Source of the DNA: Octopus bimaculoides
Taxonomy: Eukaryota
DNA length: 40,122 nt
Reading direction: 5' to 3'
Assembly (NCBI RefSeq): GCF_001194135.2
Contig: NC_068999.1
Span: 49,222,586-49,262,707 of the forward strand
Numbering within the stretch: the first letter of the stretch is position 1; the number at the start of each line of letters is the position of its first letter. The translations under genes were made by a program, and so were the position numbers. This document shows, in pieces, positions 595 through 35,200 of the stretch. The notes beneath the pieces were generated by a model that made no database searches, was not told where the DNA came from, and was given only the letters and a program-made list of their open reading frames with translations.

Positions 595-769
595 GAAAGA
601 AAAGAAAATATGGAGCCTAATGTAGAATGTCAAGGCCAATCAGTTTCTGGTACTCGAACATGTCGCGCACGTCGATCGATCAACTACAAATTTACTGAGT
701 TTGACGAGCTTATTGACAGCGCTATCCAGGACGATATGAAAAACGCGAAAGATGCTTCGGCTGCAGAAT
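595..769 (+). CDS. RSF1: RSF1 exon (ERKENMEPN...RARRSINYKFTEFDELIDSAIQDDMKNAKDASAAE)
   Basis: Acceptor gtAG 593-594, donor GTAAGC at 770, open frame, phase-1 end. Missed by the ORF track. Confidence 0.85.
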
Positions 770-1261: not shown

Positions 1262-4200
1262 TACAATATGGCTTGGTGTTAAATAACCACCTAAGGGATA
1301 CTAATTATCCAATGAATTTACTGGTTTTTTATTATCTATATCAATAACAATGTTATGAACTAACGCTCTTAACAAATAGGTATATAAATAAAATATACAT
1401 AGTTTATCAATATATAAATATCAATAAGAAATGGCAACCAAAATAGTAAACTGAACAATTAGATAATTTATTCATTAAATGATAAATTCAATTCATAAAT
1501 TACAACTGTTTCCACCTCATTAATAAAACCATGTTTTTCAAGAATAATAAAATCGCATTTAAATATATAATGAGGTTTCATCAGCTGTGTTATTTGTTTA
1601 TATGAAATAATTAAATTGAATTAAATGTATCATTTGATGATTAAATTATTTAATTGTTCAATTTATTGTTTCGGTTTCCATTTCTTATAAATATTTATAT
1701 ATATCAATCCAATATATGTATATACACATACACATGTGCATTTATATATATATGTATACACACACACACACACACACACACAAATGCATATGTATTTGTA
1801 AGTGTATATATATATATATATATCATCGTCGTCGTTTAACGTCTGCTTTCCATGCTGGCACGGATTTGACTGAGGGCTGGTGAGTCAGAAGGCTGCACTA
1901 GGCTTCAATCTGATTTGGCAGAGTTTCTACAGCTGGATGCCCTTCCTAACACCAACCACTCTGAGAGTGTAGTGGGTGCTTTTATGTGCCACCGGCTTGA
2001 GGGCCAGTCAGACGGTACTGGCATTGACCATGCTCAAATGGTGCTTTTTACGTGCCACCTGCACAGGAGCCAGTCCTACGGCATTGGCAACGACCACGCT
2101 CGAATGATGTTTTTTACGTTCCACCGGCACAGGAGCTAGTCAGGCGATGCTGGCAACAATCATGCTTGAATGGTGTTTTTTACGTGCCACTGGCACGGGA
2201 GTCAGTCAGCAGCCCTGGCAACGATCACGCTCAAATGGTGCTTTTAATGTTCCACTGGCATGGGTGCCAGCTAGGTGGTACTGTCATAGGCCACGACAAC
2301 AATTTCACTTGCCTCATGAGATCTTCGCAAGTGTAGTTTATTATCCAGTGATTAAAGGGTACTCTTAAATGGGCTGGTTATAAGTAAGTACTGGGATTGA
2401 TGCATTCTACTAAAATTTTAAGGTATTACTTCAGCATGGCCACAGTTAAATAACTGAAACAAGTAAGAAATATGTATGTTTATATGTATATATGCATATA
2501 TAATAACTTTGTGTATATGAATATATATATAGTAATTTTGGGTATATGTCTACATTTTATTTTCAGGTAATGAAGATGAAGAGTCACATAGTGGTAAAGA
2601 CATGTCGAACTTCAGCTCACGGGAAGCTCCTGTCAGCAAGGGCAAAGACATGGACACTATAATGACAGTGTACAGTGAAAGCAATGACCTTCGACCCCAA
2701 GGAATCCAAGCCAAAAAGGAAGCTGGTCGTCGCCGAGGAAAGGACATCTCTAATCTCGTGGGTAAAGGAAGCGACAGCGACGAACAGTATCCTGCACCTC
2801 GCAAAAGGCGGCCTAGGAGAAAGCTAACCACTCTAGACAGTGACAGTTATGGCTCCGATAGTGAAGAGTACAAAGCTTCCGAGTAAGTATCTTTGCTAAA
2901 ATTATATTGTACATGTGATGACAAATTCTACTGTGTTTGTTGTGTTATGGATGCTGTGAAGTAGGAGTTATTGCTGAGATGAACCCTCAGGTGTCAGTTT
3001 TGTTTCCTGGTCGGATTTTTTTTTTTTATAGATGTTTTTGTCCCAATCAAGGCTTAAAGCCATTGTAGCTTAAGGGACTATAAAGAAGGAAAAAAAGGGA
3101 CCTACAAATTAAAAAGATGTATATTAGATAATGGTTTCTTGAATGCGTAATGTGTTGGGCAAAATCAGATTGATTATGCTCAGCATTTTTTTAATTACAG
3201 ATCTGCTCGTTTATGGTTGTCTTTGAGCTAACCAGCTAATTCAATCCCAGATAGAGCAGACTACTCCTCATCCAAATAAAGGCTCACTTAAAAGATTAAG
3301 AACCTTATTTCAAAGATGTATTAGAGTAATGTATGTTTTTTTTTTAATTTGTTTTTAGGGAATCTGACCCTTCAGTTGAAGATCTTGATCTGAGTGATTA
3401 TTCAGATGAAGAGGAAGATGACGACGACGATGATGATGAAGACTATGGTACCAGGCGTCGATCGACTCGCTCATCAACCAGACAGAATACCCGTGCCAGT
3501 CAAAAGTCATCAAGAATTAACACACGGAGAAGCCGGCGACGTAACTTTGATGACTTCGGTAAAAAAAACATTTTCTCTCATTTTTTTTTTTGTTAAAATC
3601 AGCTCCACACATTGTCTTCATAATAAGACTGTTGGATATTAGTTATGTTTTTTTTTTCTGTCTTGATTGATTGTTTGGCTGCTAATCATTTATCAATGTC
3701 TACGAGAAGTAAAATATTTTATTGTTCTTTTCTCTAATCGTTACATTTTAAGGAGAAAGTTTCTGTTGTTAACAGATGGACATGCTTCGTAATATTGAAA
3801 AGATTTGTGTTTTATTAGCATTCATTGTCAATGTAATCGACTAATCTCCTCTCCCAAAATTTCCTTTAATAGAAAGGATTATTATTATCATAATTATTAT
3901 TATCATTATTATTATTATTAATAATAATAATAATAAGTGTGGTGGATGGGTGGAATTGGTAGAGCACTGGGCAAAAGTGCCTTGTGATATTTAGTTACAT
4001 ATTTTTGCAGTCTGAGCTCAAGTAATGTTGAGATGTCAAATAGATTTTAAGAACCTAATTTGAGACGGATAAAAGGATAGAAAGTTGCTCTGAAGTGTAA
4101 ATCACCTACCAAGAATCAAGTGACCTCTTCTGCTGCCCTTGCTTCAAATAAGGTTTTAAAATGTGTAAATATCGTTTTACATCGTTACTGTTTCGTATTA

Positions 4201-7200
4201 TGCCAAGGGGATTAACCCAACAATTGAGCGGGAGTTATTTACTCCTGCTGAAAATTGACGTGAATTTTTTTGGTTTTTTTTTTTGAAAAACCTACAAAAT
4301 GTCTTCTGTTTGACAACGTACCACATCTACTTCTTTTTTTCACTCTAAGAGGGAAAGAAAAGGAAGATGTTGCGACGTTCATTTCAAAAGTCATTTTTGT
4401 AATTCAGTTTCTGCTTAAAATGGAATGTAGTCTACAGGGCAAAGAATTGATAATTTGTTCCACTGAAACACCAATGAATTGTTTCTTAATATGTTGATTT
4501 CTTTTGATTAAGTACAGGACTCCTATATTGATCCCTTTTGATGCTTGATACAATCCCTAGTTCTATGATAAAGTCTTCCTGTTTTAAAGACATCTAAATC
4601 AAAAATTTCATATTTATTTTCCAATGGATAATCAGAACCTTGTAAATTGGATTTGGTAGACAAAAACTGGAAGAAGCCCATCATATATGTGTGTGTACCC
4701 TTGTCTAAATATGATAGTTGTAAACGAGCATCCTGAACATACAAGCGATGTTATTTTCCAGTCGTCCACGATAAATGTGTGTCTGGCCATGGAAAATATC
4801 TTGCTTGGAAACATGTGAGGGTTAGTGACAGGAAGAATGTCTGGTTGTAGGAAATCTGCATCAATGAATTTTGTCAGACCCATGCAAGCATGAGAAAGTA
4901 GATCTTGGTAAAAACTGTGTAGAAGTTTGTTATGTGTGTGTGTGTGTGTGTGTGTAATAGAGTAAGATATATATATATGCATATTATATTAAAGCACCGG
5001 ACTCACAATCATGAGATAGTAAGTTCAATTTCTGGACTGGTCTGTGTGTTGTGTTCTGGAGCAAGAGACTTTATTTCACGTTGCTCCAGTTCACTCAGCT
5101 GTGGAAACGAGTTGCAATGTCACTGGTGCCAAGCTGTATCGGCCCCTTTTGCCTTTCCCTTGGATAACATCAGGGGCTTGAAGAGGGGAGGCTGGTATGC
5201 ATGGGTGACTGCTGGTCTTCCATAAACAACCTTGCCTGGACTTGTGCCTGGGAGGGGAATTTTCTAGGTGCAATCCCATGGTCATTCATGACCAAAGGTA
5301 AATGGGGGTGATTTAATCAACTAGAACCCTTTAAGGCAGTGCTCCAGCATGACTGTAGTCCAGTGACTGGAACAAGTAAACAATAAAAGATATATTTATT
5401 TGTGGATTTACTTGTCTTTTTATTTTATTTTATTTATATTTATTTACTTTTTTATTTTTTTTCTATTTCAGTGGTTGATGATGATTATGACTCTGATGAC
5501 AGTGGAAATTACCGCAGGTCCACGAGAGCATCGGTGAAGCGCAAAGTTAACTACCGCGAGAAATTCAGCGACGAGGAGGAGGAAATGACACCGTCTGAAG
5601 AAAGCGAAGCGAACAGCGAAGATTTCTCTGACCTTGCATCCGACGACAGCGTGAAACCAAACAAGAAGCTAAAACTGAAACTGGAGAAAAAGAAGCTCAA
5701 GAAGTCAAAGCGAGTGATTCGCAAAAACTTCTCTGACGATGACGACGACGATAAAGCAGACGATGGGATAGACGACGAAGAAGACACTGGTGATAGAGGC
5801 AGTCGGAAGAAGAAGAGGAAAAGCCAACAGCAGTTTTCATCTTCTCATGATAACAGTGCTGAGAGCGATGACGAGCTGAAGAGCAAGAAGAAAGCTGGTA
5901 GAAAGAGGCGTCTGGCTGTCAGTGACAGCGATTCTTCTTCTTCATCTTCTTCTTCGAGCACTCGGTCACAGAATCGAGTCCGCCGCTCCCACCGCTCTTC
6001 AACGCTGAAAGTGAATTTTAAGAAGCTGCTAGATTCAGATTCCGAAGAAGATTCTGGAAACATCGAGCGAAAATACATTCTCAGCAAACTTAAAAAGAAC
6101 ACCATTGTGTCCGACTCCGATTCCATCGCATCTGACGACAAATCGAGTATAAAGAATGATGATGACGATGAGGTCGGTGGTGGTGAGAATAAGGATAGCA
6201 GCAGTAACAGAATGGACATTGATGATAATGTCGATGGCGTTGGGGTGGAGACTAAAAAGGAGGGCAAGCCTGTCGGCAACAGTAATGTGGATGCAGTTAT
6301 CAAACCTGCAGCAGCAGAAACAACAGCAGTACCACCACCACCACCAACAACAACAACAGCAACAGCAATGCTAACAACAACAACAGTTGCACCACCACCA
6401 TCAACAAAAATAACTACAGAGACATCACTACCGCCAACAGTAACACCAACAACTGTGGAAAAACCAGCACTTGCAGTAAAAGAAACAGCAGCATCAGAGA
6501 AAACTGCATTAGTTGCACCTGTAAAGAAAGTTGCACAAGCTCCAGAAAAAGAGGCAACTGCAGCACCTGAAAAATCTCATGCAGCGATACCTGAAAAAGC
6601 TGCTGCAGCAATACCTGCAGAAAAAGCTGCTACTGTACCAGAAAAAACTGATACAGCAGCATCAGTGAAAACTGATACAGAAGCACTTGTGAAAACAGCT
6701 ACTACAAAAACTGATACAGCAGCATCAGAAAAAACTGCTTCAGTAGCACCTGCGAAAACTGATATGGCAGCAGAATCAGCAAAAACAGCTCCAGTGGCAC
6801 TGATAAAGACTGATACAACAGCATCAGTAAAAACAGATACTTCTGTGTCAGTAAAAGCTGATACTGCACCCTCATCAAAATCTGCGAAGGCAGCACCAAT
6901 AAAAACTGCTTCAGGAACACCGGGAAAAACTGCTTGTGCAGCACCAGAAAATACAGATGCAGTAATACCTGCAAAAATTGCTAAAACATCTCTTGCAGAA
7001 AATGATTCAGCTACACCGGCAAAAGCTGCAAAATTAGCACCTGCAAAAGCATCTGCGGCGTCACCTGTAAAAGCCGCTGGATCAACCCCTGGGAAAACTG
7101 ATACTGCAGCTCCAGTAAAATCTGATACTGCCACACCTACCAAAATCGACACAGCAGCAAAAACTGCTTCAGCGCCATCTACAAAGTCATCTGCAGCCAC

Positions 7201-9586
7201 TCCTGCAAAAACACCAACTGCTACCAATGCAAAATCAACTGCAGACACACCTTCCAAATCAGTTGCAGACACACCTGCAAAATCAGCTGTAGCTACGCCT
7301 GCAAAGTCAGCTGTAACTACTCCTGCAAAAGCAGCTGCAGATTCACCTGCAAAGGAATCTGCAGACTCATCTGCAAAAACGGTTGTTGCCATGCCTGCAA
7401 AAACAGTTTCAGATTTGCCTGTGAAAACAGTTACAGATTCAACTGCGAAAAAAGCTGCAAGAACGCCTGCAGATTCGCCTGCAAAAACAGCTGCAGCTAT
7501 ACCTGCAAAAATAGGTGCAACCACACCTGCAAAAACAGCTTCAGACTCCCCTGCAAAAACAGGTGCAACCACACCTGCAAAAACAGCTTCAGACTCACCT
7601 GCAAAAACAGGAGCAACCACACCTGCAAAAACAGCTTCAGACTCACCTGCAAAAACAGGTGCAACCACACCTGCAAAAACAGCTTCAGACTCACCTGCAA
7701 AGACAGTTGCAGACTCACCTGCAAAAACATCTGTATCTACACCTGCAAAGACAGCTGCAGATTCTTCTGCAAAAACTGCAATTTTTCCTGCAAAAACTGC
7801 TGTCTTTCCTGCAAAAAGTGCAGTCTTTCCTGCAAAAAGTGCAGTCTTTCCCGCAAAAAGTGTAGTCTTTCCCGCAAAAAGTGCAGTTTTTCCTGCAAAA
7901 ACAGCTGCTTCGGCATCTTCAAAAACAGCTTTAGGGTCACCTGCAAAATCAGCTGTAGCCACACCTGCAAAGACAACTGCAGATTCATCTGCGAAAACAG
8001 TTTCATCCACATCTGCAAAGACAACTGCAGATTCATCTGCAAAAACAGCTGCATCTACACCTGCAAAGACATCTGCAGATTCATCCTCTAAAACAGCTGC
8101 ATCTACACCTGCAAAGACATCTGCAGATTCATCTGCAAAAACAGGTGCAACCACATCTGCGGATTCATCTGCAAAAACAGGTGCAGCCACATCTGCAAAG
8201 TCATCTGCAGATTCATCTACAAAATCAGGTGCAGCCACATCTGCAAAGACATCTGCAAAAACAGGTGCAGCCACATCTGCAAAGTCATCTGCAGATTCAT
8301 CTACAAAAACAGGTGCAGCCACATCTGCAAAGACATCTGCAGATTCATCTGCAAAAACAGGTGCAGCCACATCTGCAAAGACATCTGCAGATTCATCTAC
8401 AAAAACAGGTGCAGCCACATCTGCAAAGTCATCTGCAGATTCGTCTACAAAAACAGGTGCAGCCACATCTTCAAAGACATCTTCAAAAACAGGTGCAGCC
8501 ACATCTGCAAAGTCATCTGCAGATTCATCTGCAAAGACAGGTGCAACCACACCTGCTAAAACAGCTTCAGACTCATCTGCAAAAAAACCTGCAGCCACAC
8601 CTGCAAAGACTACTGCAGATTCATCTGCAAAAACAGGCACACCTGCAAAGACAGCTGCAGATTCATCTGCAAAAACAGCTACAACCACACCTTCGAAAAC
8701 AGGTGCAGCCACTCCTACAAAAACAGCTGTATCAGTAAAAAATACTTCAGCAACCTCTGAAAAAACTGCTGCAGGGGCAACAACAGCCAAATCCTCAGGA
8801 TCAGAAAGAACACCTGCAGCATCCTCATCAAAAACAGCTTCTTCATCAACACCAGCGAAGAAAACACCGACAGAAGGGACCAAAGCTGCCACAACTGTAT
8901 CGGCAACAGCAACAACTGCAACATCGGCATCAGTACCAAGAAAAACAAGTGCAACAACGGCATCGGCAACAACAACAACAACAACAAAAACAGCAGCTGT
9001 AGCATCGTCATCAACAACTAAGGATTCAGCAGCAAAAACTCCAGTAACAACAAGTTCCTCTACTCCCGCCAATACTAAGAGCACGAGCAGCAGCAGCTCG
9101 ACTAGCAGTAGCAGTACTGCGTCCAAGAACAGCTCCAACATCACTACCAATGTAACATCTACGACGACGACCACCACCACCAGCAGTAGCACACCCTCTA
9201 CCAACTCCACCTCAGTCACCTCGAATACAACAAGCACATCGTCCAGCGAAACAACAGTTTCAAATACAGAGGTCCGACAGAGCGACAGCAGCAGCGGCAG
9301 CGGCAGTAGTAGTAGTAGTAGCAGCAGCAGCAGCAACAGCTGCAGCAGCACGGTGAACAGTAGTTCGTTTAGCCAAATGAACGGTCACGACAATCAGAAG
9401 GCTGGCCAAAAGGACAGGCTTTTGGAAAAAGCGGAAACTCGGACTATTCCTGTCGACCAGCAACAGCAGCGAGACGATAGCTTAGGCAATGAGCAAATAA
9501 GTGGTCAAGATGACCCGTCGTTACACGTGGTGGGCAGCTCTACCAGCCGGTCTGGACCTCAGGTAGCCAACGTTTTAAAACCCTAA
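595..9586 (+). CDS. RSF1: RSF1 (remodeling and spacing factor 1 / HBXAP) orthologue, 3' part: join(595..769,2567..2882,3359..3558,5472..9586), 1601 aa in window; 5' exons lie upstream of the window
   Basis: All four exons have AG/GT boundaries and compatible phases (1,2,1); total 4806 nt = 1602 codons including stop. RARRSINYKFTEFDELIDSAIQDDMK, the GKD(I/M)S motifs, RRKLTTLDSDS and KRKVNYRE correspond in order to the post-PHD region of human RSF1 as I recall it (RTRKCISYRFDEFDEAIDEAIEDDIK, GKDIST, RRRLNDLDSDS, KRQINYKE). Confidence 0.85.
1410..1702. repeat. Long imperfect inverted repeat (foldback) in an RSF1 intron
   Basis: 1410-1522 (atatataaatatcaataagaaatggcaaccaaaatagtaaactgaacaattagataattt...acctcatta) matches the reverse complement of 1568-1702; the loop is about 45 nt. 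Confidence 0.85.
1823..2310 (-). mobile_element. SINE-like family B ((GAT)n 3' tail) with an internal ~65-bp tandem array
   Basis: The plus strand shows catcgtcgtcgtttaacgtctgctttccatgct...ggatgcccttcctaac, shared with copies at 21775, 25443 and 30663. Five ~65-66-bp units start at 1975, 2040, 2106, 2172 and 2237. Confidence 0.75.
2567..2882 (+). CDS. RSF1: RSF1 exon (NEDEESHSGKDMSNF...GKDMDTI...GKDISNL...RRKLTTLDSDSYGSDSEEYKASE)
   Basis: Acceptor tttcAG 2565-2566, donor GTAAGT at 2883; in frame with ORF 2602..2886; phase 1 in, phase 2 out. Confidence 0.9.
3359..3558 (+). CDS. RSF1: RSF1 exon (ESDPSVEDLDLSDYSDEEEDDDDDDDEDYGTRRRSTRSS...RRSRRRNFDDF)
   Basis: Acceptor tttttAG 3357-3358, donor GTAAAA at 3559; the 200 nt fit phase 2 in and phase 1 out. 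The ORF track reads this region in the wrong frame. Confidence 0.85.
4750..4910 (+). mobile_element. Degraded family B SINE-like copy, opposite orientation
   Basis: ggttagtgacaggaagaatgtctggttgtaggaaatctgc...acccatgcaagcatgagaaagtag resembles the reverse complement of the family B segments seen at 1823 and 21775. Confidence 0.5.
5472..9586 (+). CDS. RSF1: RSF1 giant terminal exon (acidic/basic region followed by a ~1,100-aa A/S/T/K/P repeat tail)
   Basis: Acceptor tttcAG 5470-5471; phase 1 matches the previous exon (G+TG = Val); frame open for 4115 nt to TAA 9584-9586. The ORF start at 5402 is intronic. Confidence 0.85.
7513..7701 (+). repeat. Coding 48-bp tandem repeat x4 (TGATTPAKTASDSPAK)
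   Basis: Near-identical units ccacacctgcaaaaacagcttcagactc(c/a)cctgcaaaaacagg(t/a)gcaa start at 7521, 7569, 7617 and 7665 (the last is partial). Confidence 0.9.
7778..7903 (+). repeat. Coding 21-bp tandem repeat x6 (A-V-F-P-A-K-S/T)
   Basis: Units start at 7778, 7799, 7820, 7841, 7862 and 7883, e.g. gcagtctttcctgcaaaaagt. Confidence 0.9.
8140..8540 (+). repeat. Coding ~48-bp repeat block (SAK(T/S)SADSS(A/T)KTGAAT) with internal deletions
   Basis: Repeated acaggtgcagccacatctgcaaag(a/t)catctgcagattcatct; about 8-9 units by eye. Confidence 0.85.
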
Positions 9587-9704
9587 AGCTTTCATCTGTT
9601 CTATCACCAATCACCATCACCTTGCTACGCTGCCGTCTGTCTAAATTCCTACGACTGGTTTCCTGGTTATTGTATTATTTTAAAAGACATTTTTTTTTTT
9701 TACC

Positions 9705-10938: not shown

Positions 10939-10977
<39 letters not shown>

Positions 10978-11121
10978 TGGGCTTCTTTAAGTTTCCATCT
11001 ACTAAATCCACTCAAGGCTTTTGTTGGCCTAATGCTATAGTGGAAGACACTGGCCAAAGGTGTCATGCAGTGGGATTGATCCTGGAACCATGTGGTTGGG
11101 AAGCAAACTTCTTACTACACA
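10901..11121 (-). mobile_element. Family B 3' stub (10901-10940), (CA)n, then family A head (10974-11121)
   Basis: atcatcgtttaatgtctgccttcccatgctagcatggg, then the reverse complement of the family A head including gacactggccaaaggtgtcatgcagtggga...ggaaccatgtggttgg. Confidence 0.7.
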
Positions 11122-25477: not shown

Positions 25478-28400
25478 CCGTCATCATTTAACGTCTGTCT
25501 TCCATGCTGACACAGGTTGCGTGGTTTGACAGGATCCTCCAACGCGTTGAAGTACCGCGTCAAGTTCCAATGTCTGTTTTGGCGTGGGTTTTTACAGCTG
25601 GATACCCTTCCTATAGCCAAGCACTTTCCACAGTACATAGGGTACTTTTTCTTTTTTCGTGGCAGTGGCTCGAGTGGGGGTAACCATGTCACTCACTCGA
25701 CCGAATAGCTCCCTTGACTGAGCGTGAGTACAGTGGAGATGGCGGTGGGTTGATGCCAGGTATTGTCAGGTCAAAGAATGATAGAAGGCCAAGAACGGGT
25801 GTCATGCTGTAGGGAAGATACATAACTCTTTACTTTCTCTCTCTTTTACTTGTTTCAGTCATTTGACTGCGGCCATGCTGGAGCACCGCCTTTAGTCGAG
25901 CAAATCGACCCCAGGACTTATTCTTCGGAAGCCTAGTTCTCATTCTATCGGTCTCTTTTGCCAAACCGCTAAGTTACGGGGACGTAAACACACCAGCATC
26001 AGTTGTCAAGCGATGTTGGAGGGACACACACAGACGCACAAACANNNNNNNNNNNNNNNNNNNNNNNNNNNNNNNNNNNNNNNNNNNNNNNNNNNNNNNN
26101 NNNNNNNNNNNNNNNNNNNNNNNNNNNNNNNNNNNNNNNNNNNNNNNNNNNNNNNNNNNNNNNNNNNNNNNNNNNNNNNNNNNNNNNNNNNNNNNNNNNN
26201 NNNNNNNNNNNNNNNNNNNNNNNNNNNNNNNNNNNNNNNNNNNNNNNNNNNNNNNNNNNNNNNNNNNNNNNNNNNNNNNNNNNNNNNNNNNNNNNNNNNN
26301 NNNNNNNNNNNNNNNNNNNNNNNNNNNNNNNNNNNNNNNNNNNNNNNNNNNNNNNNNNNNNNNNNNNNNNNNNNNNNNNNNNNNNNNNNNNNNNNNNNNN
26401 NNNNNNNNNNNNNNNNNNNNNNNNNNNNNNNNNNNNNNNNNNNNNNNNNNNNNNNNNNNNNNNNNNNNNNNNNNNNNNNNNNNNNNNNNNNNNNNNNNNN
26501 NNNNNNNNNNNNNNNNNNNNNNNNNNNNNNNNNNNNNNNNNNNNNNNNNNNNNNNNNNNNNNNNNNNNNNNNNNNNNNNNNNNNNNNNNNNNNNNNNNNN
26601 NNNNNNNNNNNNNNNNNNNNNNNNNNNNNNNNNNNNNNNNNNNNNNNNNNNNNNNNNNNNNNNNNNNNNNNNNNNNNNNNNNNNNNNNNNNNNNNNNNNN
26701 NNNNNNNNNNNNNNNNNNNNNNNNNNNNNNNNNNNNNNNNNNNNNNNNNNNNNNNNNNNNNNNNNNNNNNNNNNNNNNNNNNNNNNNNNNNNNNNNNNNN
26801 NNNNNNNNNNNNNNNNNNNNNNNNNNNNNNNNNNNNNNNNNNNNNNNNNNNNNNNNNNNNNNNNNNNNNNNNNNNNNNNNNNNNNNNNNNNNNNNNNNNN
26901 NNNNNNNNNNNNNNNNNNNNNNNNNNNNNNNNNNNNNNNNNNNNNNNNNNNNNNNNNNNNNNNNNNNNNNNNNNNNNNNNGAGAAGTTTTCACAGCATGT
27001 GACATCCCAGATGAAGGGCCTACCGTTACGGAACGGGAAAATTATCATACTGTCCGGCCTTTAACCGACCGCTCGGTCTAGCCCCGCGGGGTCGAAGGTT
27101 AGTCTGCGGCGTCTGGGCCATGCTTTATGATCTTGTTAAGGGCAGCATGTCATGGAAGGTGGAATAGACTCGATAAAATGAAGGCTAAGTCAAGTGTTGG
27201 TTGATCTCTCTGTCACTCTCAGGTCTTTTGATTCTTCGGGGAACATAGGGCTGCAACAACATTTTCCCAACGGACGCAGTTCTGGGGGATCCTCTTCAGC
27301 TCAGCCTATGTCATTCCGGCTGCCTTCACCTCTGCGTCAACACTCCTGCGCCAAGACTGTTTTGGTCGGCCCACTTTTCGCTTCCCGCGTGGGTTCCAGT
27401 CAAGGGCCTGCTTGGTGACATTTGGTGCAGGTTTCCGTAGCGTGTGGCCTATCCATCCCCATTTTCGTTTCTTGATATCTGTCTTGATTGGAGACGTCCT
27501 AAAGTCCACGGATCCCCACAAATCTCTGAATCAATTTACATTAACGTCTTCGTAGTTTAATCTCTAGTTTGATTCGTGATGTTGTTTCTTGTAGCAAACA
27601 TCAAAACAAATTAGGACACTTCCATACGTTAACCGTTTAGCAATTAGATTACTGTCAAATGTTATGTTTATTTATTTGCATTGTTTTGAATTAATCTTGC
27701 TTTGTCTTGTAGTTTTAGTGTTGTGTGGAGACCAGCTTGTCGAAGAAGCGTTTCCTCTGGGTGTCTTTAAAAGGCGACTAAAAGACTCCAGTTTGGCACT
27801 CTCTCTCTCACCTAGTTGATCTAGCTAGGGTTGAGACCAAGTCGCAGCTTGCATCCCAGTATAAACAAACCACTGGTTTGGCTTTTTTTTGCCCAAAGTC
27901 ACCAAGTGGCCATCTCCACAGCTGGCATAATGGTATTTATGATCCTTCTTTTTGCAATGCCAGTAACTCCAAGACTTGTGGAGGAGGTGAATTAGTGTTC
28001 TGCCATTACTGCCATTATACATTGTCTTCAAAAATTCCTTTTTATTGAAGGTTATCTTTTATTCTTTTATTCTCAGAGCCAGCTCATTACAAGCAAAGGT
28101 TACCCCTGTGAAGTTCACACAGTTCTCACTGAAGATGGCTTCTATTTGGAAATGCAAAGAATTCCTCATGGAATCAAAGACAACGACATGAAAAAAGTCA
28201 GGCCAGTCGTATTTTTGCAACATGGAGTTCTGGGATCTTCAACCAATTTCTTAACAAATCTCGCAAATGAATCTCTAGGTATGGTTCTTTAATCACACAT
28301 ATATATGCATGCACACACACACATACTGATACATATTCATACATAGACACACACACGCACACACACACAACACACACACACACACACACACACACATATG

Positions 28401-28710
28401 TATGCATACATACACACACACACACACACATATATATACCAGGTTGGCCAATGTCACCTGGCAATAAATCAAAATTCCATAATTACCTAATATTCAATTT
28501 TATTTATTCATTCCAATTATGAGTGTTTAATAATTGAATACTGTGAGTTAAAAATCATTGTTTTTTCCCCAACATTTCTCTATTTATTAGCGAAGTCCTC
28601 ATATCAAATAATTTTTTTGTTTTAATCTTGGAATTAAATGNNNNNNNNNNNNNNNNNNNNNNNNNNNNNNNNNNNNNNNNNNNNNNNNNNNNNNNNNNNN
28701 NNNNNNNNNN

Positions 28711-28755
<45 letters not shown>

Positions 28756-30661
28756 TTGTATATGTATATGTATATATATATATATGTATATATTTGTATA
28801 TGTATATGTGTGTATATGTATATATGTGTGTGTGTCTATCTGTGTGTGTATATATATTTGTATATGTATTTGTGCATATGTGTATGTATTTTTGCATAAT
28901 ATGTATATACACAAACTTACATATTTTCCCCGGTATATTTCTTCCTTTCTATATGTAGCCTACCTTTTAGCTGATGCTGGTTATGACGTCTGGCTTGGCA
29001 ATTCCCGTGGAACTACGTATGGGCTCCACCATACTTTGTATCCAACTTCCAGTGACATGTTTTGGAGATGGAGGTGAGTCATTGGAAATAACGACTATTT
29101 TTCTTTCTCTCCCATTGTCAACGACTCTACATTTTCAGCGTCTGTATTCCGTTACCTGCCTCTATAACCATCGCTGTCACCACCAGACCATCGACACTTC
29201 ATATAGCCTCGATGTGGTCACACAATTTGCTAAAAGTAGCTGTCAAACTTCCTGCAAACTACATCCTATTTCGTTAAGAAGAAAGATGCGTTTGATAATT
29301 TAGGCTTAGATATAGGGGACAACTGCAGCTGTGTGGTTAAGAATTTTGCTTTACTACCAAATGGTTCTGGGTTCAGTCCCACTGTGTGGCATCTTGGGCA
29401 AGTCTCTTCTAGTATTGTTCTGGGCTGACCAAAGTCTTGTGAGTGAATTTGATTGGCAGAAACTGAAAGAAGCCTGTTGTAAAATGTGTATGTGTGTGTG
29501 TGTGTGTGTGTATGCACATGTGTGTATATGTATGTATATATATATGTATGTGTGTGTATATGTATATGAGAGGAAAGCTTTTGGTATGAGGTCTTATTTA
29601 AAATTTGATTTAGGCTCCAGATGTCGCCACCAGCTTCTTGAGTCACCCAGGAATTGGATCAACTGATTTCACCAGAAACTCTTGTGGAATGAAAGAAGAC
29701 ATAACTTCTTATATTCGTCCTTCAAGTTCTTCTAAAGTCTTTGGTTTGGTACTGTTGAGATGGACATAAGAGGTGTTGACAGTCGGCAGTCAGGCCAAGA
29801 AAGAAAGATCATGGCTGGCCGGGCACCAATCACATGGAAGGAGGAGAGAGGGGTAGGGGGCAGCGTGATTGAATGATTAGAAAATATATATATATATATA
29901 TATATATATGTGATGTGTATGTATGTTTGTTTGTCCCTCCTGCCACCACTTGATAACTGGTGTTGGTGAGTTTATGCCCCCATAATCTAGCAGTTTGGCA
30001 AAAGAGACCGATAGAATAAGTACAAGGCTTAAAAAATAAGTACTGGGCTCAACTTGTTTGACCAAATTTATCCAAGGCAGTGCTCCAGCATGGTCGCTGT
30101 CTAATGACTGAAACAAATAAAAGAATAAAAGAATAAAAGAATTATCTGTAGTTTGAGACTTCCATGTTTATGGAATTTTAAAATTAAATTAAATTTGTTT
30201 TTATTTATTTATTTACCTTTGCTTGTGTTTTTTTTTTCTTCTTTTTCTCCTCCAGTTTTGACCATATGGCTGCATTTGACTTACCAGCATCCTTGGACTA
30301 TGTTACCAAGGTAACAGGTCAGGAGAAGATGTATTATGTGGCACATTCACAAGGATCACTTATAGGCTTTTTAGCCTTCTCCGAAAACCAAACTTTGGCC
30401 AACAAGGTTTGTTCTGAAACGTTGTTCTAAGTTTAGTTCCGAAAACTCAAAGAACCATACAAGTGCAGGCATGGCTGTGTTACATGGCATCGTGAATTTA
30501 GAAATGTCCTGTAACTATCTGGTGGTGTTTCCACGTCTGCTACATGTGGTTTGTTTTCAGTTGAAAATAATTTGTTGCAGAAAAGAATGCAAAAACTGAG
30601 TTACACAAGCTGTGTTTATGCTAGAGACTAACAAGCAGCATTTCACCACAATCACTCACCT

Positions 30662-32225: not shown

Positions 32226-35200
32226 ATGTGTGTGCATGCACACGTGTGTGTGTGAGCAGGCATGTGCAGGTGTTATTCACATGTGTATGTGCACATGCAT
32301 TCGTGCATGTGCATGCGCACGTGTGTGTACATGTGCATGTGTGCATGTTTGTGTGCATGCACACATGTGCGTGTGAGTGCAGGCATGTGCACATGCATTC
32401 ATGAATGTGTGTGCATGTGTGTATGCACGTGCATGCATGTGTGTGTGCATGCATGTGTGGATTTATCCTGAGTTCATCCCCAGGCTATCAAACACGAGCT
32501 AATCCTTTTGTATTGTTCAATTTTTACCTGCAGATATTATTCGATATATTTGGGAGGAAGTCTTTCTTACCTGAGAACATAATCATCACAACCCTTGCCA
32601 AAACAGTTTGCAGATGCCGAAGGCTCAACTTTTTGTGCCAAGACGCCATCAGGATTGTTGCAAAGTTTGATGATCGGAACATGAATTCAGTAAGTATTCT
32701 CATCTTCCTTTCTTTTACTGGTTTTTCAACCCATGGCATTGTGCTCATAAATGGACATCAGCTTCAATAGTTTTGTCGGTCATATTTGTACCTAGTACAT
32801 TTTTTCCCTGTTTGATATGCTTTTTATTATTCTCTATTTGTTGAACTGTGAAGTTATGGGACATAAATAGACACAGCATAAACATCATTTTCTCATATAG
32901 ACTAGTGTAAACATAAACACACCATTATATACATATATAGATACGTACATATATACATACATACATACGTAATACATACATACATACGTAATACATACAT
33001 ACATACGTAATACATACATACATACATAGTTTAGATTTACAGAAAACAAAAAAAAAATGACAGGTGAGGGAACAACAAACAGGTGTATTAGTTTGATGCT
33101 TGAGAAGATTGGAAAAGTCTTTAATGCTCTTAATTCTCTTCTTTTACAGTCTCGTATACCAGTTTATTTAACACATTCACCTGCCGGTACCTCTACTCAA
33201 AATATGGCCCATTTTGCTCAGGTAAGGTTACAACGAAATTTTCGTCCAGTGCCAGAAAATACATCTTTATCATCAGAATTCTCCTTCTCATATTTTCTTT
33301 CATTATAAAATGTTCCTTTTGTTTGTTTTTGCAAAATATTCTCTCAACCCTTTTTTGATACCCAACCTGCCCGAGACTGCTTCTGGTTCTATGATATAAA
33401 CTTCTCAAATTAATTCCAGTTTCATGTTAATGTATATATTCCAAACACTAGATTACTATTGACAAAGTTATTTCTCTAAATCCTTCAATGTTATCAAAAA
33501 TAATTAGAATTGAAAGCATTGAATTTCTGCAGAAATTTAATAGCAAAAGTGATTATGTCCGTTTCCAAGTTTCTAAGGAAGACAAGTTATTCAATAAAAA
33601 AAATTTTTTTTCAAATCAAAGTAAAAGCAACTCGTACAGAAGGATGGACATCCCCCAAATATACATAATATATTACAAAGAGGGCGGTCAATTTTTTTTG
33701 TTGGCTAATATATCTGTATATCTGACTAATTCTGTCATTGTAGTTGACAATAAGAAGGGCTTCCGACCACAAAACCTGAAACAAAAGTCATTATGAAATA
33801 CAGCATAAATGAATGAATTTGACATAGAATTTGACATAGAATTTGACATAGAATTTGACATAGAATTTGACATAGAATTTGACATTCTATGTTCTCTTAG
33901 TTAATTTAATGATATCAGGTGCTGGTGTGGCTGTGTGGGAAGAAGCTTGCTTTCTAACTACATGGCTCTGGGTTCAATCCTACTGCATCACACATTGGAC
34001 AAGTGTCTTCTATTATATATTTGGGCTGACCGAAGCTTTCTGAGTGGAATTTGGTAGCTGGAAACTGAAAGAAGCCCGTTGTATATATGTATGTATGTGT
34101 GTGTGTGTGTGTGTTTGCGTTTGTGTTTGTCTTTGCTTTTGTTTGTCCCCCACCACTGCTTGACAACCGGTGTTGGTGTGTTATGTCCCCGTAACATAGC
34201 GGTTTGGCAAATAGATCGATAGAACAGGTATCAGGCTTAAAAGAAAACATAAGTACTGGATTCGATTCCTTCGACTAAAAATTCTTCAAGGCGGTGCTCT
34301 AGCATGGCCGCAGTTTAATGATTGAAACCAGTAAAAGACGAAAGATAAACGGTAATGTAGAAAGCGTAAAAAAAAAAAATATAAAAAAAGAATTTTCCCT
34401 GTGGAAAGAGGAGGCAACTCTGAAATCTTGCTGTTAATTAAAAGTAAAGTTACGTTTGTAATGTCGGGAAAGAAACATTCAATCAAGGATTAATATTAAT
34501 TAAATTTAAATAATTTTCTCTGATCATTAAGTTCTATTAGACTGTTATTTCATGGTTTCCATTTCAAGTTCCAATATGGTGAACTATGAACAATTGTTTT
34601 CATACTTTAGCATTTGGTAAACTAAATATCGGACGGGGAATCAACGGAGGAGTTAAATCACTGGAGAAAAATACCTTGCTGGATTTATTTCGGTATTTTG
34701 CATTCTGAGTTCAAATTCTGCCAAGATCAATTTTGCCTTTCATTTGTTTTCAAGAGTCGATAAATAAAATGCCAATCCTGGGGGCTGGTAGAATCGTTAC
34801 TGCATCAGAAAAAAAAAAAAAAAAAAAAAAATCTTAACGACATTACTTCGTCGACTTTGCCTTTCATACTTTTGGAGTCGATAAAATCAACATCTGTTGA
34901 GTACTGAGGTAGGTGTACGCAACTGGTACTTAATTTATCGACCCCGAAAGGATGAAAGGCAAAGTCGACCTGGGCGGAATTTGAACTCAGAACGTAAAGA
35001 CAGATGAAATACCGCTAAGCATTTCGCCCGGCGTGCTAACGTTTCTGCCAGCTCGTCGCCTTATAAAAGTTACATATTACAACCCAGCCTCAAACTTTAA
35101 AATAAATAGTCATTATAAGCTTCTCTTCTGTTTTGTGATCCAAATGTATTTTAAAATTTGTCATGAAATCATAAGTNNNNNNNNNNATTACGGCACCAAA

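What the first reader, a model, noticed from the sequence alone, without database searches (positions are those of the whole stretch)
6293..9586. RSF1 carries a ~1,100-aa lineage-specific tail resembling a histone H1 C-terminal domain, with about 30 CDK consensus sites
Seen: the terminal exon continues in frame into an A/S/T/K/P tail with lysine every ~8 residues, about 32 S/T-P-x-K motifs (manual count, mostly TPAK/SPAK) and 7 S-T-P motifs. The in-window part alone is 1601 aa, although its conserved motifs match only the post-PHD region of human RSF1 (~1441 aa in total, from memory). Established: S/T-P-x-K repeats are the DNA-binding, CDK-regulated motifs of linker histone tails; S-pT-P is the Polo-box docking consensus; and human RSF1 has been reported to use a C-terminal CDK1 site to recruit PLK1 at kinetochores (recalled). 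Inference: this may be an ISWI-remodeller subunit fused to its own phospho-switchable linker-histone-like or PLK1-scaffold domain, acting as a cell-cycle rheostat for chromatin compaction or condensate formation.
Basis: partly seen in the sequence, partly recalled or inferred. Interest (0 to 1): 0.8.

Follow-up and report, generated by a model that had tools for sequence, protein, structure and literature searches.

The report
Repeat-built disordered insert in RSF1
A cephalopod-type RSF1 chromatin-remodeller gene carries an in-frame insert of about 990 amino acids, built from tandem 8- and 16-residue repeats; it is a real, lineage-specific disordered region with 32 CDK-type sites, but it only superficially resembles a histone H1 tail and its function is untested.

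Summary
The reading frame is open from 5472 to 9586. The stretch 6293-9583 encodes 1097 aa, rich in A, T, S, K and P. It has 32 S/T-P-x-K motifs, against 3.4±1.7 in composition shuffles, and a lysine mostly every 8 residues.

The gene is RSF1. Four phase-compatible exons give exactly 1601 codons and match named RSF1 proteins.

The "tail" is an internal insert, about 6158-9127, made of 24/48-nt tandem repeats. It lies upstream of a conserved C-terminal block. A related cephalopod-like genome and cDNA lack it, with about 21 aa at that point.

Other protostome RSF1s have unrelated low-complexity inserts of up to about 1300 aa in the same slot, so an insert here is ordinary. The CDK-site array is not ordinary: none of about 150 homologues exceeds 5 sites per 300 aa.

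The H1 analogy is weak:
- Lysine is 10.9% and net charge is +5 per 100 aa.
- A+K is 33%, against about 70% in H1 tails.
- No sequence match to H1 was found.

The count of S-[S/T]-P motifs (all seven are S-T-P) is at chance. About half the repeat units have lost the proline.

The exon is probably not terminal. A conserved donor at 9562|9563 is spliced in a relative's cDNA.

No expression data were available for the window's species. Best reading: a coding minisatellite that produces a disordered, phosphorylatable spacer.

The parts
595..769 (+). RSF1 post-PHD exon A, containing the motif R..RRSINYKFTEFDELIDSAIQDD
   Evidence: tblastn of P0002 (named 'remodeling and spacing factor 1' by JGI) hits 655-741 at E=1e-4. 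The donor GTAAGC lies at 770-775, and the phase fits exon B. The 5' boundary is tentative.
2567..2882 (+). RSF1 exon B, with GKDMS/GKDIS motifs and a basic K/R stretch
   Evidence: tblastn of P0002 hits 2722-2883 at E=2e-5. blastn to relative locus L001 gives 79% identity over 2641-2890. The acceptor AG is at 2565-2566 and the donor GTAAGT at 2883-2888.
3359..3558 (+). RSF1 exon C: an acidic tract followed by R/S/T-rich sequence, ending NFDDF
   Evidence: blastn to L001 gives 71% identity. The relative's cDNA L003 joins ...NFDDF directly to VVDDDYD, which confirms the C-to-D junction. The splice sites are shown.
5472..6157 (+). Large exon D, conserved N-block: VVDDDYD..RRSTRASVKRKVNYRE, followed by acidic, basic and serine tracts
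   Evidence: The acceptor AG is at 5470-5471. Identity to P0001 is 63-86% in the aligned blocks.
6158..9127 (+). Lineage-specific in-frame insert of about 990 aa. Sub-parts: a P/T-rich lead-in (about 6293-6560); older, diverged 8-residue xEK/xVK units (about 6560-7132); the TPAK/SPAK 16-residue array (7133-7760); FPAK 7-residue units (7767-7902); SSAK/TSAK units that have lost the proline (about 7900-8540); a second TPAK stretch (8540-8730); and T/S homopolymer-like sequence (8740-9127)
   Evidence: In the global alignment P0001 has only about 21 aa here. Supporting data: TRF periods, the unit listing and self-blastn over 6482-8773. This frame has 0 stops in 1097 codons, against 35 and 30 in the other + frames.
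9128..9343 (+). Ancestral T/S-rich linker (NSSNITT..TTTTTTT..STPST) and a poly-Ser run
   Evidence: It aligns to P0001 'DSNNITTVTTTTTTISTVTTPSTSTTTTT'.
9344..9562 (+). Conserved C-terminal block SSFSQMNGHDNQK...TSRSGPQ. It is homologous to the NG-x and F-x-I-x-N-L-L region of other RSF1 proteins
   Evidence: blastn to L001 gives 69% identity over 9362-9591. The human CDK1-site column (QSPxK) reads HDNQK here.
9563..9586 (+). Conserved splice donor GTAGCC, and the read-through codons VANVLKP followed by TAA
   Evidence: CAG|GTAGC is conserved with L001. In the relative's cDNA L003 this donor is spliced to an exon 9.3 kb downstream, at L001 20296, which follows ttttttctgacAG. It is the only strong donor in the exon. 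The window's own 3' mini-exon was not found.

Best explanation
The region is a coding minisatellite inside the large 3' exon of an RSF1 orthologue. A 24-nt unit (8 residues, consensus T-[AGS]-A-[AD]-[TS]-[PS]-A-K) and its 48-84-nt higher-order units expanded by slippage or unequal exchange. This inserted about 990 aa between the acidic/basic serine-rich region and the conserved C-terminal block. This slot is the length-hypervariable part of RSF1's disordered C-terminal region, where other protostomes carry unrelated low-complexity inserts.

Shown or directly supported by sequence: the repeat architecture, frame preservation, absence from a relative, the position of the slot, and the composition.

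Inferred: the product is an intrinsically disordered, weakly basic, polar spacer that is translated with the rest of RSF1. Its most likely biochemical property is multi-site phosphorylation by proline-directed kinases (CDK or MAPK) at up to 32 [ST]PxK sites. Full occupancy would move the segment's net charge from about +55 to about -9. This would work like the [ST]PxK repeats next to acidic tracts in nucleolin's N-terminal disordered domain. It would not work like the DNA-condensing, highly basic tail of histone H1.

Much of the array is probably tolerated rather than selected, with constraint mainly on the reading frame and on lysine periodicity.
For: RSF1 identity:
- tblastn and profile hits to proteins named RSF1 in Dreissena, spiders and a tick, and to the Lymnaea homologue.
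- A four-exon, phase-consistent model of 1601 codons.

Repeat origin:
- TRF periods are all multiples of 3.
- The 48-nt copies at 7517-7708 are nearly identical.
- The array matches itself over 6482-8773.

Coding status:
- This frame has 0 stops in 1097 codons; about 50 are expected from base composition, and the other + frames have 35 and 30.
- The conserved C-block downstream is in the same frame.
- The exon has no strong internal donor or acceptor apart from the conserved donor at 9563.
- In a relative, the homologous exon is uninterrupted in a spliced cDNA.
- Lysine codons vary synonymously (AAA 51, AAG 20). Lysine is the best-kept periodic residue: the probability of the same residue 8 positions on is 0.76, against 0.52 for P and 0.21 for S.

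Lineage specificity:
- P0001/L001 has about 21 aa where the window has about 990.
- The tail and the array find no relatives among 5.8 billion proteins.

Hypervariable slot:
- The distance from the VNY block to the F.I.NLL block ranges from 136 to 1305 aa in homologues: Lymnaea 1305, Dreissena 790, spiders 545-678. In the window it is 1332.

Disorder:
- Composition; no Pfam family.
- AlphaFold2 on the single sequence gives mean pLDDT 40 and no secondary structure.

The nucleolin analogy rests on PMC9064852.
Against: There is no transcript, peptide or phosphorylation evidence for the window's species. No octopod orthologue could be retrieved, so neither the age of the insert nor its copy-number stability is known.

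The assembly has N-gaps elsewhere in the window, and repeat copy number could be mis-assembled.

An open frame in a repeat whose unit is a multiple of 3 nt is weaker evidence for coding than in unique sequence. The minus strand also carries a 924-aa ORF with only 5 stops in that frame.

The AlphaFold run used no alignment. The splice-site scan used only simple consensus patterns. The charge-switch arithmetic assumes full occupancy of all sites.
Confidence: 0.6

Rival explanations
1. The insert is a linker-histone-like DNA-binding and chromatin-compacting domain that CDK can switch by phosphorylation, and/or a multivalent PLK1 Polo-box scaffold. On this view RSF1 acts as a cell-cycle rheostat.
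For: There are 32 [ST]PxK sites. SPAK and TPxK are genuine H1-type CDK sites and SPKK-type motifs bind DNA (PMC5400378 and PMC3287190). Human RSF1 uses a C-terminal CDK1 site to dock PLK1 (PMC4918322). The insert lies about 70 residues upstream of the block homologous to that human region. Lysine periodicity is well kept.
Against: Lysine is 10.9% and A+K 32.7%, against about 70% in H1 C-terminal domains. Net charge is +5 per 100 aa and D+E is 6.7%. Each motif has one basic residue (TPAK-T), not the two of SPKK or TPKK. PDB sequences and Pfam give no H1 or nucleolin match. S-[ST]-P is at chance: 7 against 5.6±2.3. The proline is replaced by serine in about half the units. The human QSPxK column is not S/T-P in cephalopods or in other invertebrates.
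Confidence: 0.12
2. The insert is a neutral by-product with no function of its own. A slippage-prone low-complexity tract ballooned in a permissive disordered linker. Selection acts only to keep the downstream C-block in frame, and the CDK-like motifs are an accident of which unit was amplified.
For: The same slot holds unrelated inserts of 140-1300 aa in other RSF1s. RSF1 homologues carry other lineage-specific tandem repeats elsewhere, for example ISDVPAKTGEDPK about 25 times in Lymnaea and KLATPKDAE about 14 times in a vertebrate homologue. The 48-nt copies are nearly identical, which implies recent expansion. The proline-to-serine change has spread through half the array. The relative does without the insert.
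Against: Lysine periodicity persists even in the older, diverged part of the array: the probability of lysine 8 positions on is 0.62 at 6560-7132. There is not one frameshift or stop across about 3 kb. A 32-site array is unique among about 150 homologues.
Confidence: 0.2
3. The insert is not part of the mature protein. Either it is removed from the mRNA as an intron within the exon or by alternative splicing, or its size is an assembly artefact.
For: No expression data were available. Repeat arrays are often mis-assembled, and the window has six N-gaps. The exon's annotated end is itself doubtful, because a conserved donor at 9563 is used in a relative.
Against: The exon has no strong-consensus internal donor or pyrimidine-rich acceptor. 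The frame is intact through diverged, non-identical units, which are hard to produce as an artefact. There are no N-gaps within 5472-9586. The homologous exon, including its low-complexity linker, is uninterrupted in the relative's cDNA.
Confidence: 0.08

Closest known systems
RSF1/HBXAP, the SNF2H-partner subunit of the RSF ISWI remodeller (vertebrate)
   Same: The post-PHD motifs are shared: RxxRxxI[NS]Y[KR]FxE[FY]D, GKD[MI]S, and VDDD..RR..VNYxE. So are the acidic, basic and serine tracts, and a C-terminal NG-x and x-I/V-x-N-L/V-L block. The human C-terminal region carries a CDK1 site (Ser1375, QSPxK) that docks PLK1.
   Different: Vertebrate homologues have under 100 aa between the acidic region and the C-terminus, and one key CDK site. 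Here about 990 aa of repeats with 32 sites are inserted. The human site's column is not S/T-P here. The final DLVxYV(C/T) motif was not found in the window or in the relative's locus.
Lymnaea stagnalis RSF1 homologue CAL1542884.1 (3176 aa), and the RSF1 proteins of Dreissena, Solemya, spiders and a tick
   Same: They carry large lineage-specific low-complexity inserts (439-1305 aa) in the same slot, between the VNY block and the F.I.NLL block. The Lymnaea homologue also has tandem repeats elsewhere in the protein.
   Different: Their inserts are rich in P, Q, G, S, H or E, near neutral or acidic, and have at most 1.1 [ST]Px[KR] per 100 aa. The window's insert is rich in A, T, S and K, has an 8-residue period and carries about 2.9 sites per 100 aa.
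Nucleolin N-terminal disordered domain ([ST]PxK[KA] repeats)
   Same: It has short-period [ST]PxK repeats next to long acidic tracts in a nuclear, histone-interacting protein. These repeats are substrates of CDK1 and MAPKs (PMC9064852).
   Different: Nucleolin has 8 repeats, mostly TPxKK with two basic residues. Here there are 32 sites with a single lysine followed by T/S, in about 100 units. No sequence homology was detected.
Linker histone H1 C-terminal domain
   Same: It is disordered, low-complexity and prone to slippage, contains A, K and P, and has (S/T)PxK CDK sites that include SPAK-type sites.
   Different: In H1 tails A+K is about 70% and the tail is highly basic; here A+K is 32.7%, S+T is 37.7% and net charge is +5 per 100 aa. 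There is no winged-helix globular domain and no sequence match.
Neurofilament-H/M KSP multiphosphorylation repeats (recalled from general knowledge, not tested here)
   Same: They are long tandem arrays with a 6-8-residue period and K-S-P-x-K-type proline-directed kinase sites. They act as phosphorylation-controlled disordered spacers.
   Different: They are cytoskeletal proteins, E/K-rich, with far higher charge density. There is no homology.

Membership tests
RSF1 (remodeling and spacing factor 1) orthologue | Conserved post-PHD motifs: RxxRxxI[NS]YKFxEFD, GKD[MI]S, and VDDD..RR..VNYxE | tested here: met
   tblastn with the JGI-named RSF1 P0002 gives E=1e-4 and 2e-5. A profile search retrieves proteins that their sources name RSF1.
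RSF1 (remodeling and spacing factor 1) orthologue | N-terminal DDT/WHIM region and PHD finger | not testable with these tools
   The window starts downstream of the PHD-encoding exons. No full-length gene model for this species could be retrieved.
RSF1 (remodeling and spacing factor 1) orthologue | C-terminal G-F-x-I-x-N-L-L block followed by an acidic stretch and the D-[LI]-V-x-Y-V-[TC] end motif | tested here: inconclusive
   The first block is recognisable as GPQVANVL. The end motif was not found in any + frame of the 30 kb downstream, nor in the relative's 10 kb downstream. The relative's cDNA ends ...GPQVLP*.
Linker-histone H1 C-terminal-domain-like segment | Very high lysine content and net positive charge (A+K about 70%) | tested here: not met
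   K is 10.9%, A+K 32.7% and net charge +55 over 1097 aa, compared with PMC3287190.
Linker-histone H1 C-terminal-domain-like segment | (S/T)-P-x-K CDK consensus sites | tested here: met
   32 sites, against 3.4±1.7 in shuffles.
Linker-histone H1 C-terminal-domain-like segment | Sequence relationship to H1, or an attached winged-helix globular domain | tested here: not met
   No Pfam family was hit. The PDB sequence search returns only an unrelated 8-residue-repeat protein and a uL4 extension.
PLK1 Polo-box docking scaffold | Enrichment of S-[pS/pT]-P motifs | tested here: not met
   7 observed against 5.6±2.3 expected from composition.
PLK1 Polo-box docking scaffold | Phosphorylation-dependent binding to the Polo-box domain | not testable with these tools
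   This needs a biochemical pull-down.
Coding minisatellite / tandem-repeat disordered region | Head-to-tail units whose length is a multiple of 3 nt, with higher-order units and high identity between neighbouring copies | tested here: met
   TRF periods are 24, 48, 21, 36, 72, 84 and 90 nt. Nearly identical 48-nt copies are listed.
Coding minisatellite / tandem-repeat disordered region | Reading frame kept through the array and continuous with conserved flanking coding sequence | tested here: met
   This frame has 0 stops, against 30-35 in the other + frames. The conserved N- and C-blocks are in the same frame.
Coding minisatellite / tandem-repeat disordered region | Present in mature mRNA and protein | not testable with these tools
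   No transcript or protein data were retrieved for the window's species. The only indirect support is a relative's cDNA and the absence of internal consensus splice sites.

The most novel reading that the evidence does not exclude
The array is a selected, octopod-specific multi-site phosphorylation module in RSF1. CDK or MAPK would prime the [ST]P sites. Serine or threonine recurs every 4 residues, with an unbroken chain of 55 such positions. That spacing would allow a GSK3-type kinase, which uses an S/T-x-x-x-pS/T motif, to spread phosphorylation along hundreds of residues. This would turn a weakly basic spacer into a polyanion and so tune how the RSF complex engages chromatin or kinetochores through the cell cycle. 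It might stand in for the single vertebrate CDK1 site at the PLK1 docking position, which cephalopods lack.
Probability: 0.1. Interest if true: 0.6.

Novelty: new member of a known kind. Interest (0 to 1): 0.3.

Why it matters
If the insert is expressed, it nearly doubles the disordered C-terminal half of a conserved ISWI-remodeller subunit. It also adds the densest CDK-consensus array seen among about 150 sampled RSF1 homologues. That makes it a natural experiment on how far a chromatin regulator's disordered region can expand, and on whether repeat-born phosphosites acquire function.

The comparative result has wider value. RSF1 has a defined length-hypervariable slot just upstream of its C-terminal block, filled with different low-complexity sequences in gastropods, bivalves, arachnids and this cephalopod. 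Without expression or phosphorylation data the insert remains a curiosity, not a mechanism.

Tried and rejected
- Pfam scans of the exon product and of four sub-segments found no family.
- A PDB sequence search with the non-repeat part found nothing meaningful. The search with the TPAK core returned only 'HeliScrew4', an 8-residue [ST]PEQ[IV]AAL repeat protein, and a uL4 KPVKKAAP extension. I rejected both as periodicity and composition matches: the window's units lack their hydrophobic positions.
- Word-indexed homologue searches with the whole tail and with the array alone gave only marginal low-complexity hits (P0003, P0156, P0157), which I judged irrelevant. The whole-tail search was also saturated by low-complexity candidates: it missed P0001, which does share the C-block.
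- Looking up the window's own ORF in the assembly index found nothing on record.
- A metagenome scan for relatives confirmed none of 600 pattern matches.
- I searched for the window's equivalent of the relative's 3' mini-exon by exact and 3-mismatch patterns and by sensitive blastn. It was not found; only microsatellite hits came back.
- I searched for the RSF1 end motif D[LI]VxYV downstream by regex in all + frames and by tblastx against the relative's locus. It was absent.
- The 924-aa ORF on the minus strand (6577-9351) is an antisense artefact of the repeat composition.
- Literature searches for octopus RSF1 and for the SRA run of the relative's cDNA found nothing relevant.
Full report
**1. 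What is in the sequence.**
The window looks like cephalopod genomic DNA. It is rich in TA and CA microsatellites, has many copies of a short dispersed repeat, and contains six N-gaps, none of them inside the feature. On the + strand a long frame is open from the acceptor AG at 5470-5471 to TAA at 9584-9586.

It contains exactly 32 [ST]PxK motifs (17 TPAK and 8 SPAK among them) and 7 S-T-P. Lysines are 8 residues apart in 71 of 119 intervals. Composition shuffles give 3.4±1.7 [ST]PxK, so that excess is real. They give 5.6±2.3 S-[ST]-P, so the seven Polo-box-type motifs are at chance.

**2. How it was built.**
The DNA is a tandem array. TRF reports periods of 24, 48, 21, 36, 72, 84 and 90 nt over about 6560-8733, and self-blastn matches 6482-8773 to itself at 67-73% identity. 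The 8-residue consensus is T-[AGS]-A-[AD]-[TS]-[PS]-A-K.

- Four 48-nt copies at 7517-7708 (TPAKTASDSPAKTGAT) differ by only 1-2 nt, which indicates recent expansion.
- A 21-nt FPAK variant occupies 7767-7902.
- From about 7900 to 8540 the proline codon CCT has become TCT in most units (SSAK/TSAK), and this variant has itself been amplified.
- Overall the proline column is P in 35 and S in 32 of the 71 regular units.
- Lysine is the best-kept periodic residue. The probability of finding the same residue 8 positions on is 0.76 for K, 0.52 for P, 0.48 for A and 0.21 for S.

The 32 sites are therefore copies of one or a few ancestral motifs, and the CDK consensus is not what has been preserved.

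**3. Which gene it belongs to.**
Four exons with canonical splice sites and compatible phases sum to 4803 nt, or 1601 codons: 595-769, 2567-2882, 3359-3558 and 5472-9583.

The upstream exons carry RSINYKFTEFDE and GKDMS/GKDIS motifs. They match a protein that JGI names 'remodeling and spacing factor 1' (P0002). A profile built from the window, P0001 and P0002 was run against 1.84 billion representative proteins and gave 213 hits. Their sources name several of these RSF1: Dreissena polymorpha, Stegodyphus, Caerostris and Ornithodoros. The hits also include the Lymnaea stagnalis and Solemya velum homologues. The RSF1 assignment is sound for the part of the gene that lies in the window. The DDT/WHIM and PHD parts lie outside it.

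**4. It is an insert, not a tail, and it is lineage-specific.**
P0001 (343 aa) comes from a 182-kb ENA contig, locus L001. It is the orthologous large exon of a fairly distant, cephalopod-like relative. Four colinear blastn blocks match at 69-79% identity.

P0001 has the same N-block (VDDDYD...DDKSSIK) and the same C-block (SSFSQMNGHDN...TSRSGPQVAN[VI]L). Only about 21 aa lie between the N-block and a T-rich linker. In the window, homology stops at about nt 6157 and resumes at about nt 9128 (NSSNITT...). So about 990 aa are specific to the window's lineage.

No relative of the array was found among 5.8 billion proteins. That collection evidently holds no octopod RSF1, so the age of the insert within octopods is unknown.

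**5. The slot is hypervariable in RSF1 generally.**
I measured the distance from the VNY[RH]E block to the G-F-x-I-x-N-L-L block in homologues:

| Homologue | Distance (aa) |
|---|---|
| Short forms | 136-199 |
| Cephalopod-like relative (P0001) | 296 |
| Tick | 439 |
| Solemya | 457 |
| P0072 | 460 |
| Spiders | 545-678 |
| Dreissena | 790 |
| Lymnaea | 1305 |
| Window | 1332 |

The other inserts are rich in P, Q, G, S, H or E and have at most 1.1 [ST]Px[KR] per 100 aa. No homologue exceeds 5 such sites in any 300-aa window, whereas the window's exon reaches 22.

RSF1 homologues also carry other lineage-specific tandem repeats elsewhere. Examples are ISDVPAKTGEDPK about 25 times in Lymnaea and KLATPKDAE about 14 times in a vertebrate homologue. 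An insert at this position is therefore ordinary for the family. Its composition and its array of CDK-consensus sites are not.

**6. Is it translated?**
Arguments for:
- The RSF1 frame has 0 stops in 1097 codons. Base composition predicts about 50, and the other + frames have 35 and 30.
- The frame holds through the older, diverged units as well as the recent ones, and it continues into the conserved C-block.
- Lysine codons vary synonymously, AAA 51 and AAG 20.
- The exon contains no strong-consensus internal donor or pyrimidine-rich acceptor.
- A spliced cDNA contig, L003 from Logan run SRR21372857, comes from a species about 90% identical to L001. It covers the homologous exon without interruption, from the exon C junction onwards.

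Arguments against: no transcript or peptide from the window's own species was available. An open frame in a repeat whose unit is a multiple of 3 nt is weaker evidence than in unique sequence; one minus-strand frame has only 5 stops and a 924-aa ORF.

I put the probability that the insert is in the mature protein at about 0.8-0.85.

**7. Probably not the terminal exon.**
The same cDNA leaves the exon at ...TCTGGACCTCAG|GT. It continues with GTCCTTCCATAA (V-L-P-stop). That sequence lies 9.3 kb downstream in L001 at 20296, directly after ttttttctgacAG.

The donor CAG|GTAGC is conserved in the window at 9560-9565. The protein may therefore end ...SGPQ plus a few residues from an undetected 3' mini-exon. 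Alternatively it ends with the read-through VANVLKP. This changes only the last few residues.

The canonical RSF1 end motif (acidic stretch, then D[LI]VxYV[TC]) was not found downstream in either locus.

**8.
The recalled human biology is correct. CDK1 phosphorylates Ser1375 of RSF1 in a Q-S-P-x-K context, and this docks PLK1 (PMC4918322). In a multi-species alignment that column falls in the NG-x block. It reads HDNQK in the window and is not S/T-P in other invertebrates. The array lies upstream of this block, separated from it by the ancestral T/S-rich linker.

The H1 analogy fails on the features that let H1 tails condense DNA. A+K is about 70% in typical H1 C-terminal domains (PMC3287190) and 32.7% here. 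S+T is 37.7% here, and net charge is only +55 over 1097 aa. Each motif has one basic residue. Neither the PDB sequences nor Pfam link the insert to H1.

A closer functional analogue is nucleolin's N-terminal disordered domain. It has eight [ST]PxK[KA] repeats beside long acidic tracts, and CDK1 and MAPKs phosphorylate them (PMC9064852). AlphaFold2 on a 300-aa piece, run without an alignment, gives pLDDT 40 and no secondary structure, consistent with disorder.

**9. Most likely mechanism.**
Shown: an in-frame coding minisatellite expanded in the permissive, disordered slot of RSF1.

Inferred: it is translated as a flexible, weakly basic, polar spacer. Its main biochemical handle is multi-site phosphorylation by proline-directed kinases. 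Full occupancy of 32 sites would shift the net charge from +55 to about -9. That could alter its interplay with the neighbouring acidic and basic tracts. Much of the array is probably tolerated rather than selected.

Serine or threonine recurs every 4 residues, with an unbroken chain of 55 positions against at most 13 in shuffles. This permits a speculative priming-and-spreading phosphorylation model. I treat that only as the most novel reading the evidence does not exclude.

**10. Verdict.**
- Observation: confirmed.
- Interpretation: partly supported. RSF1 identity, lineage specificity and the CDK-consensus array hold. The H1-like domain, the PLK1 scaffold, the "tail" label and the "terminal exon" label do not.
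- Novelty: a new member of a known kind, namely a lineage-specific tandem-repeat disordered region in a chromatin protein.
- Interest: modest, pending expression, phosphorylation and comparative octopod data.

Noticed in passing
window 9560-9586; L001 10984-10990 and 20283-20322; L003 1009-1038: The donor CAG|GTAGC at the end of the large exon is conserved. In a related species' cDNA it is spliced across a 9.3-kb intron to a mini-exon that encodes only V-L-P-stop. The window's own mini-exon could not be located.
   Followed up: partly
window 9344-9586 and 9587-40122 (+ frames); L001 11033-21032: The cephalopod-type RSF1 seems to lack the C-terminal acidic stretch and D[LI]VxYV[TC] motif. That motif is present in the vertebrate, mollusc and arachnid homologues examined.
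   Followed up: partly
window 6577-9351, minus strand: A 924-aa antisense ORF (FAGV/FADE-type repeats) runs through the array. This frame has only 5 stops. I regard it as a by-product of the repeat composition, not a gene.
   Followed up: partly
window 7133-8740 (protein level): Serine or threonine recurs every 4 residues through the array. The longest unbroken chain is 55 positions, against at most 13 in shuffles. This spacing fits primed S/T-x-x-x-pS/T kinases such as GSK3.
   Followed up: partly
P0005 (Lymnaea stagnalis CAL1542884.1) residues ~690-1010; P0010, P0013, P0028: Other RSF1 homologues carry their own unrelated tandem repeats in the N-terminal half. Examples are ISDVPAKTGEDPK about 25 times in Lymnaea, KLATPKDAE about 14 times, and KDADKEKT-type arrays in vertebrate homologues. 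RSF1 appears unusually prone to repeat expansion.
   Followed up: no
window ~28990-29077 and ~36990-37100, + strand: Exon-like ORF pieces (LADAGYDVWLGNSRGTTYG and PVALYSGGRDSLADP) look like an acid-lipase-type alpha/beta hydrolase gene downstream of RSF1. The only Pfam hit is weak: Abhydrolase_1, E=0.086.
   Followed up: partly
window 10942-11121, 13065-13284, 14034-14264, 17410-17788, 18542-18927, 19371-19757, 25841-26044, 29885-30135, 33904-34338, 35560-35747 and others: A short dispersed repeat family of about 150-400 bp, SINE-like and often next to TA or CA microsatellites, occurs at least 10 times on both strands at 70-90% identity.
   Followed up: no
window 13288-13310, 14963-15362, 15762-16284, 26045-26980, 28641-28710, 35177-35186: There are six runs of N (assembly gaps, 1962 bases in total), all outside the RSF1 exons.
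   Followed up: no
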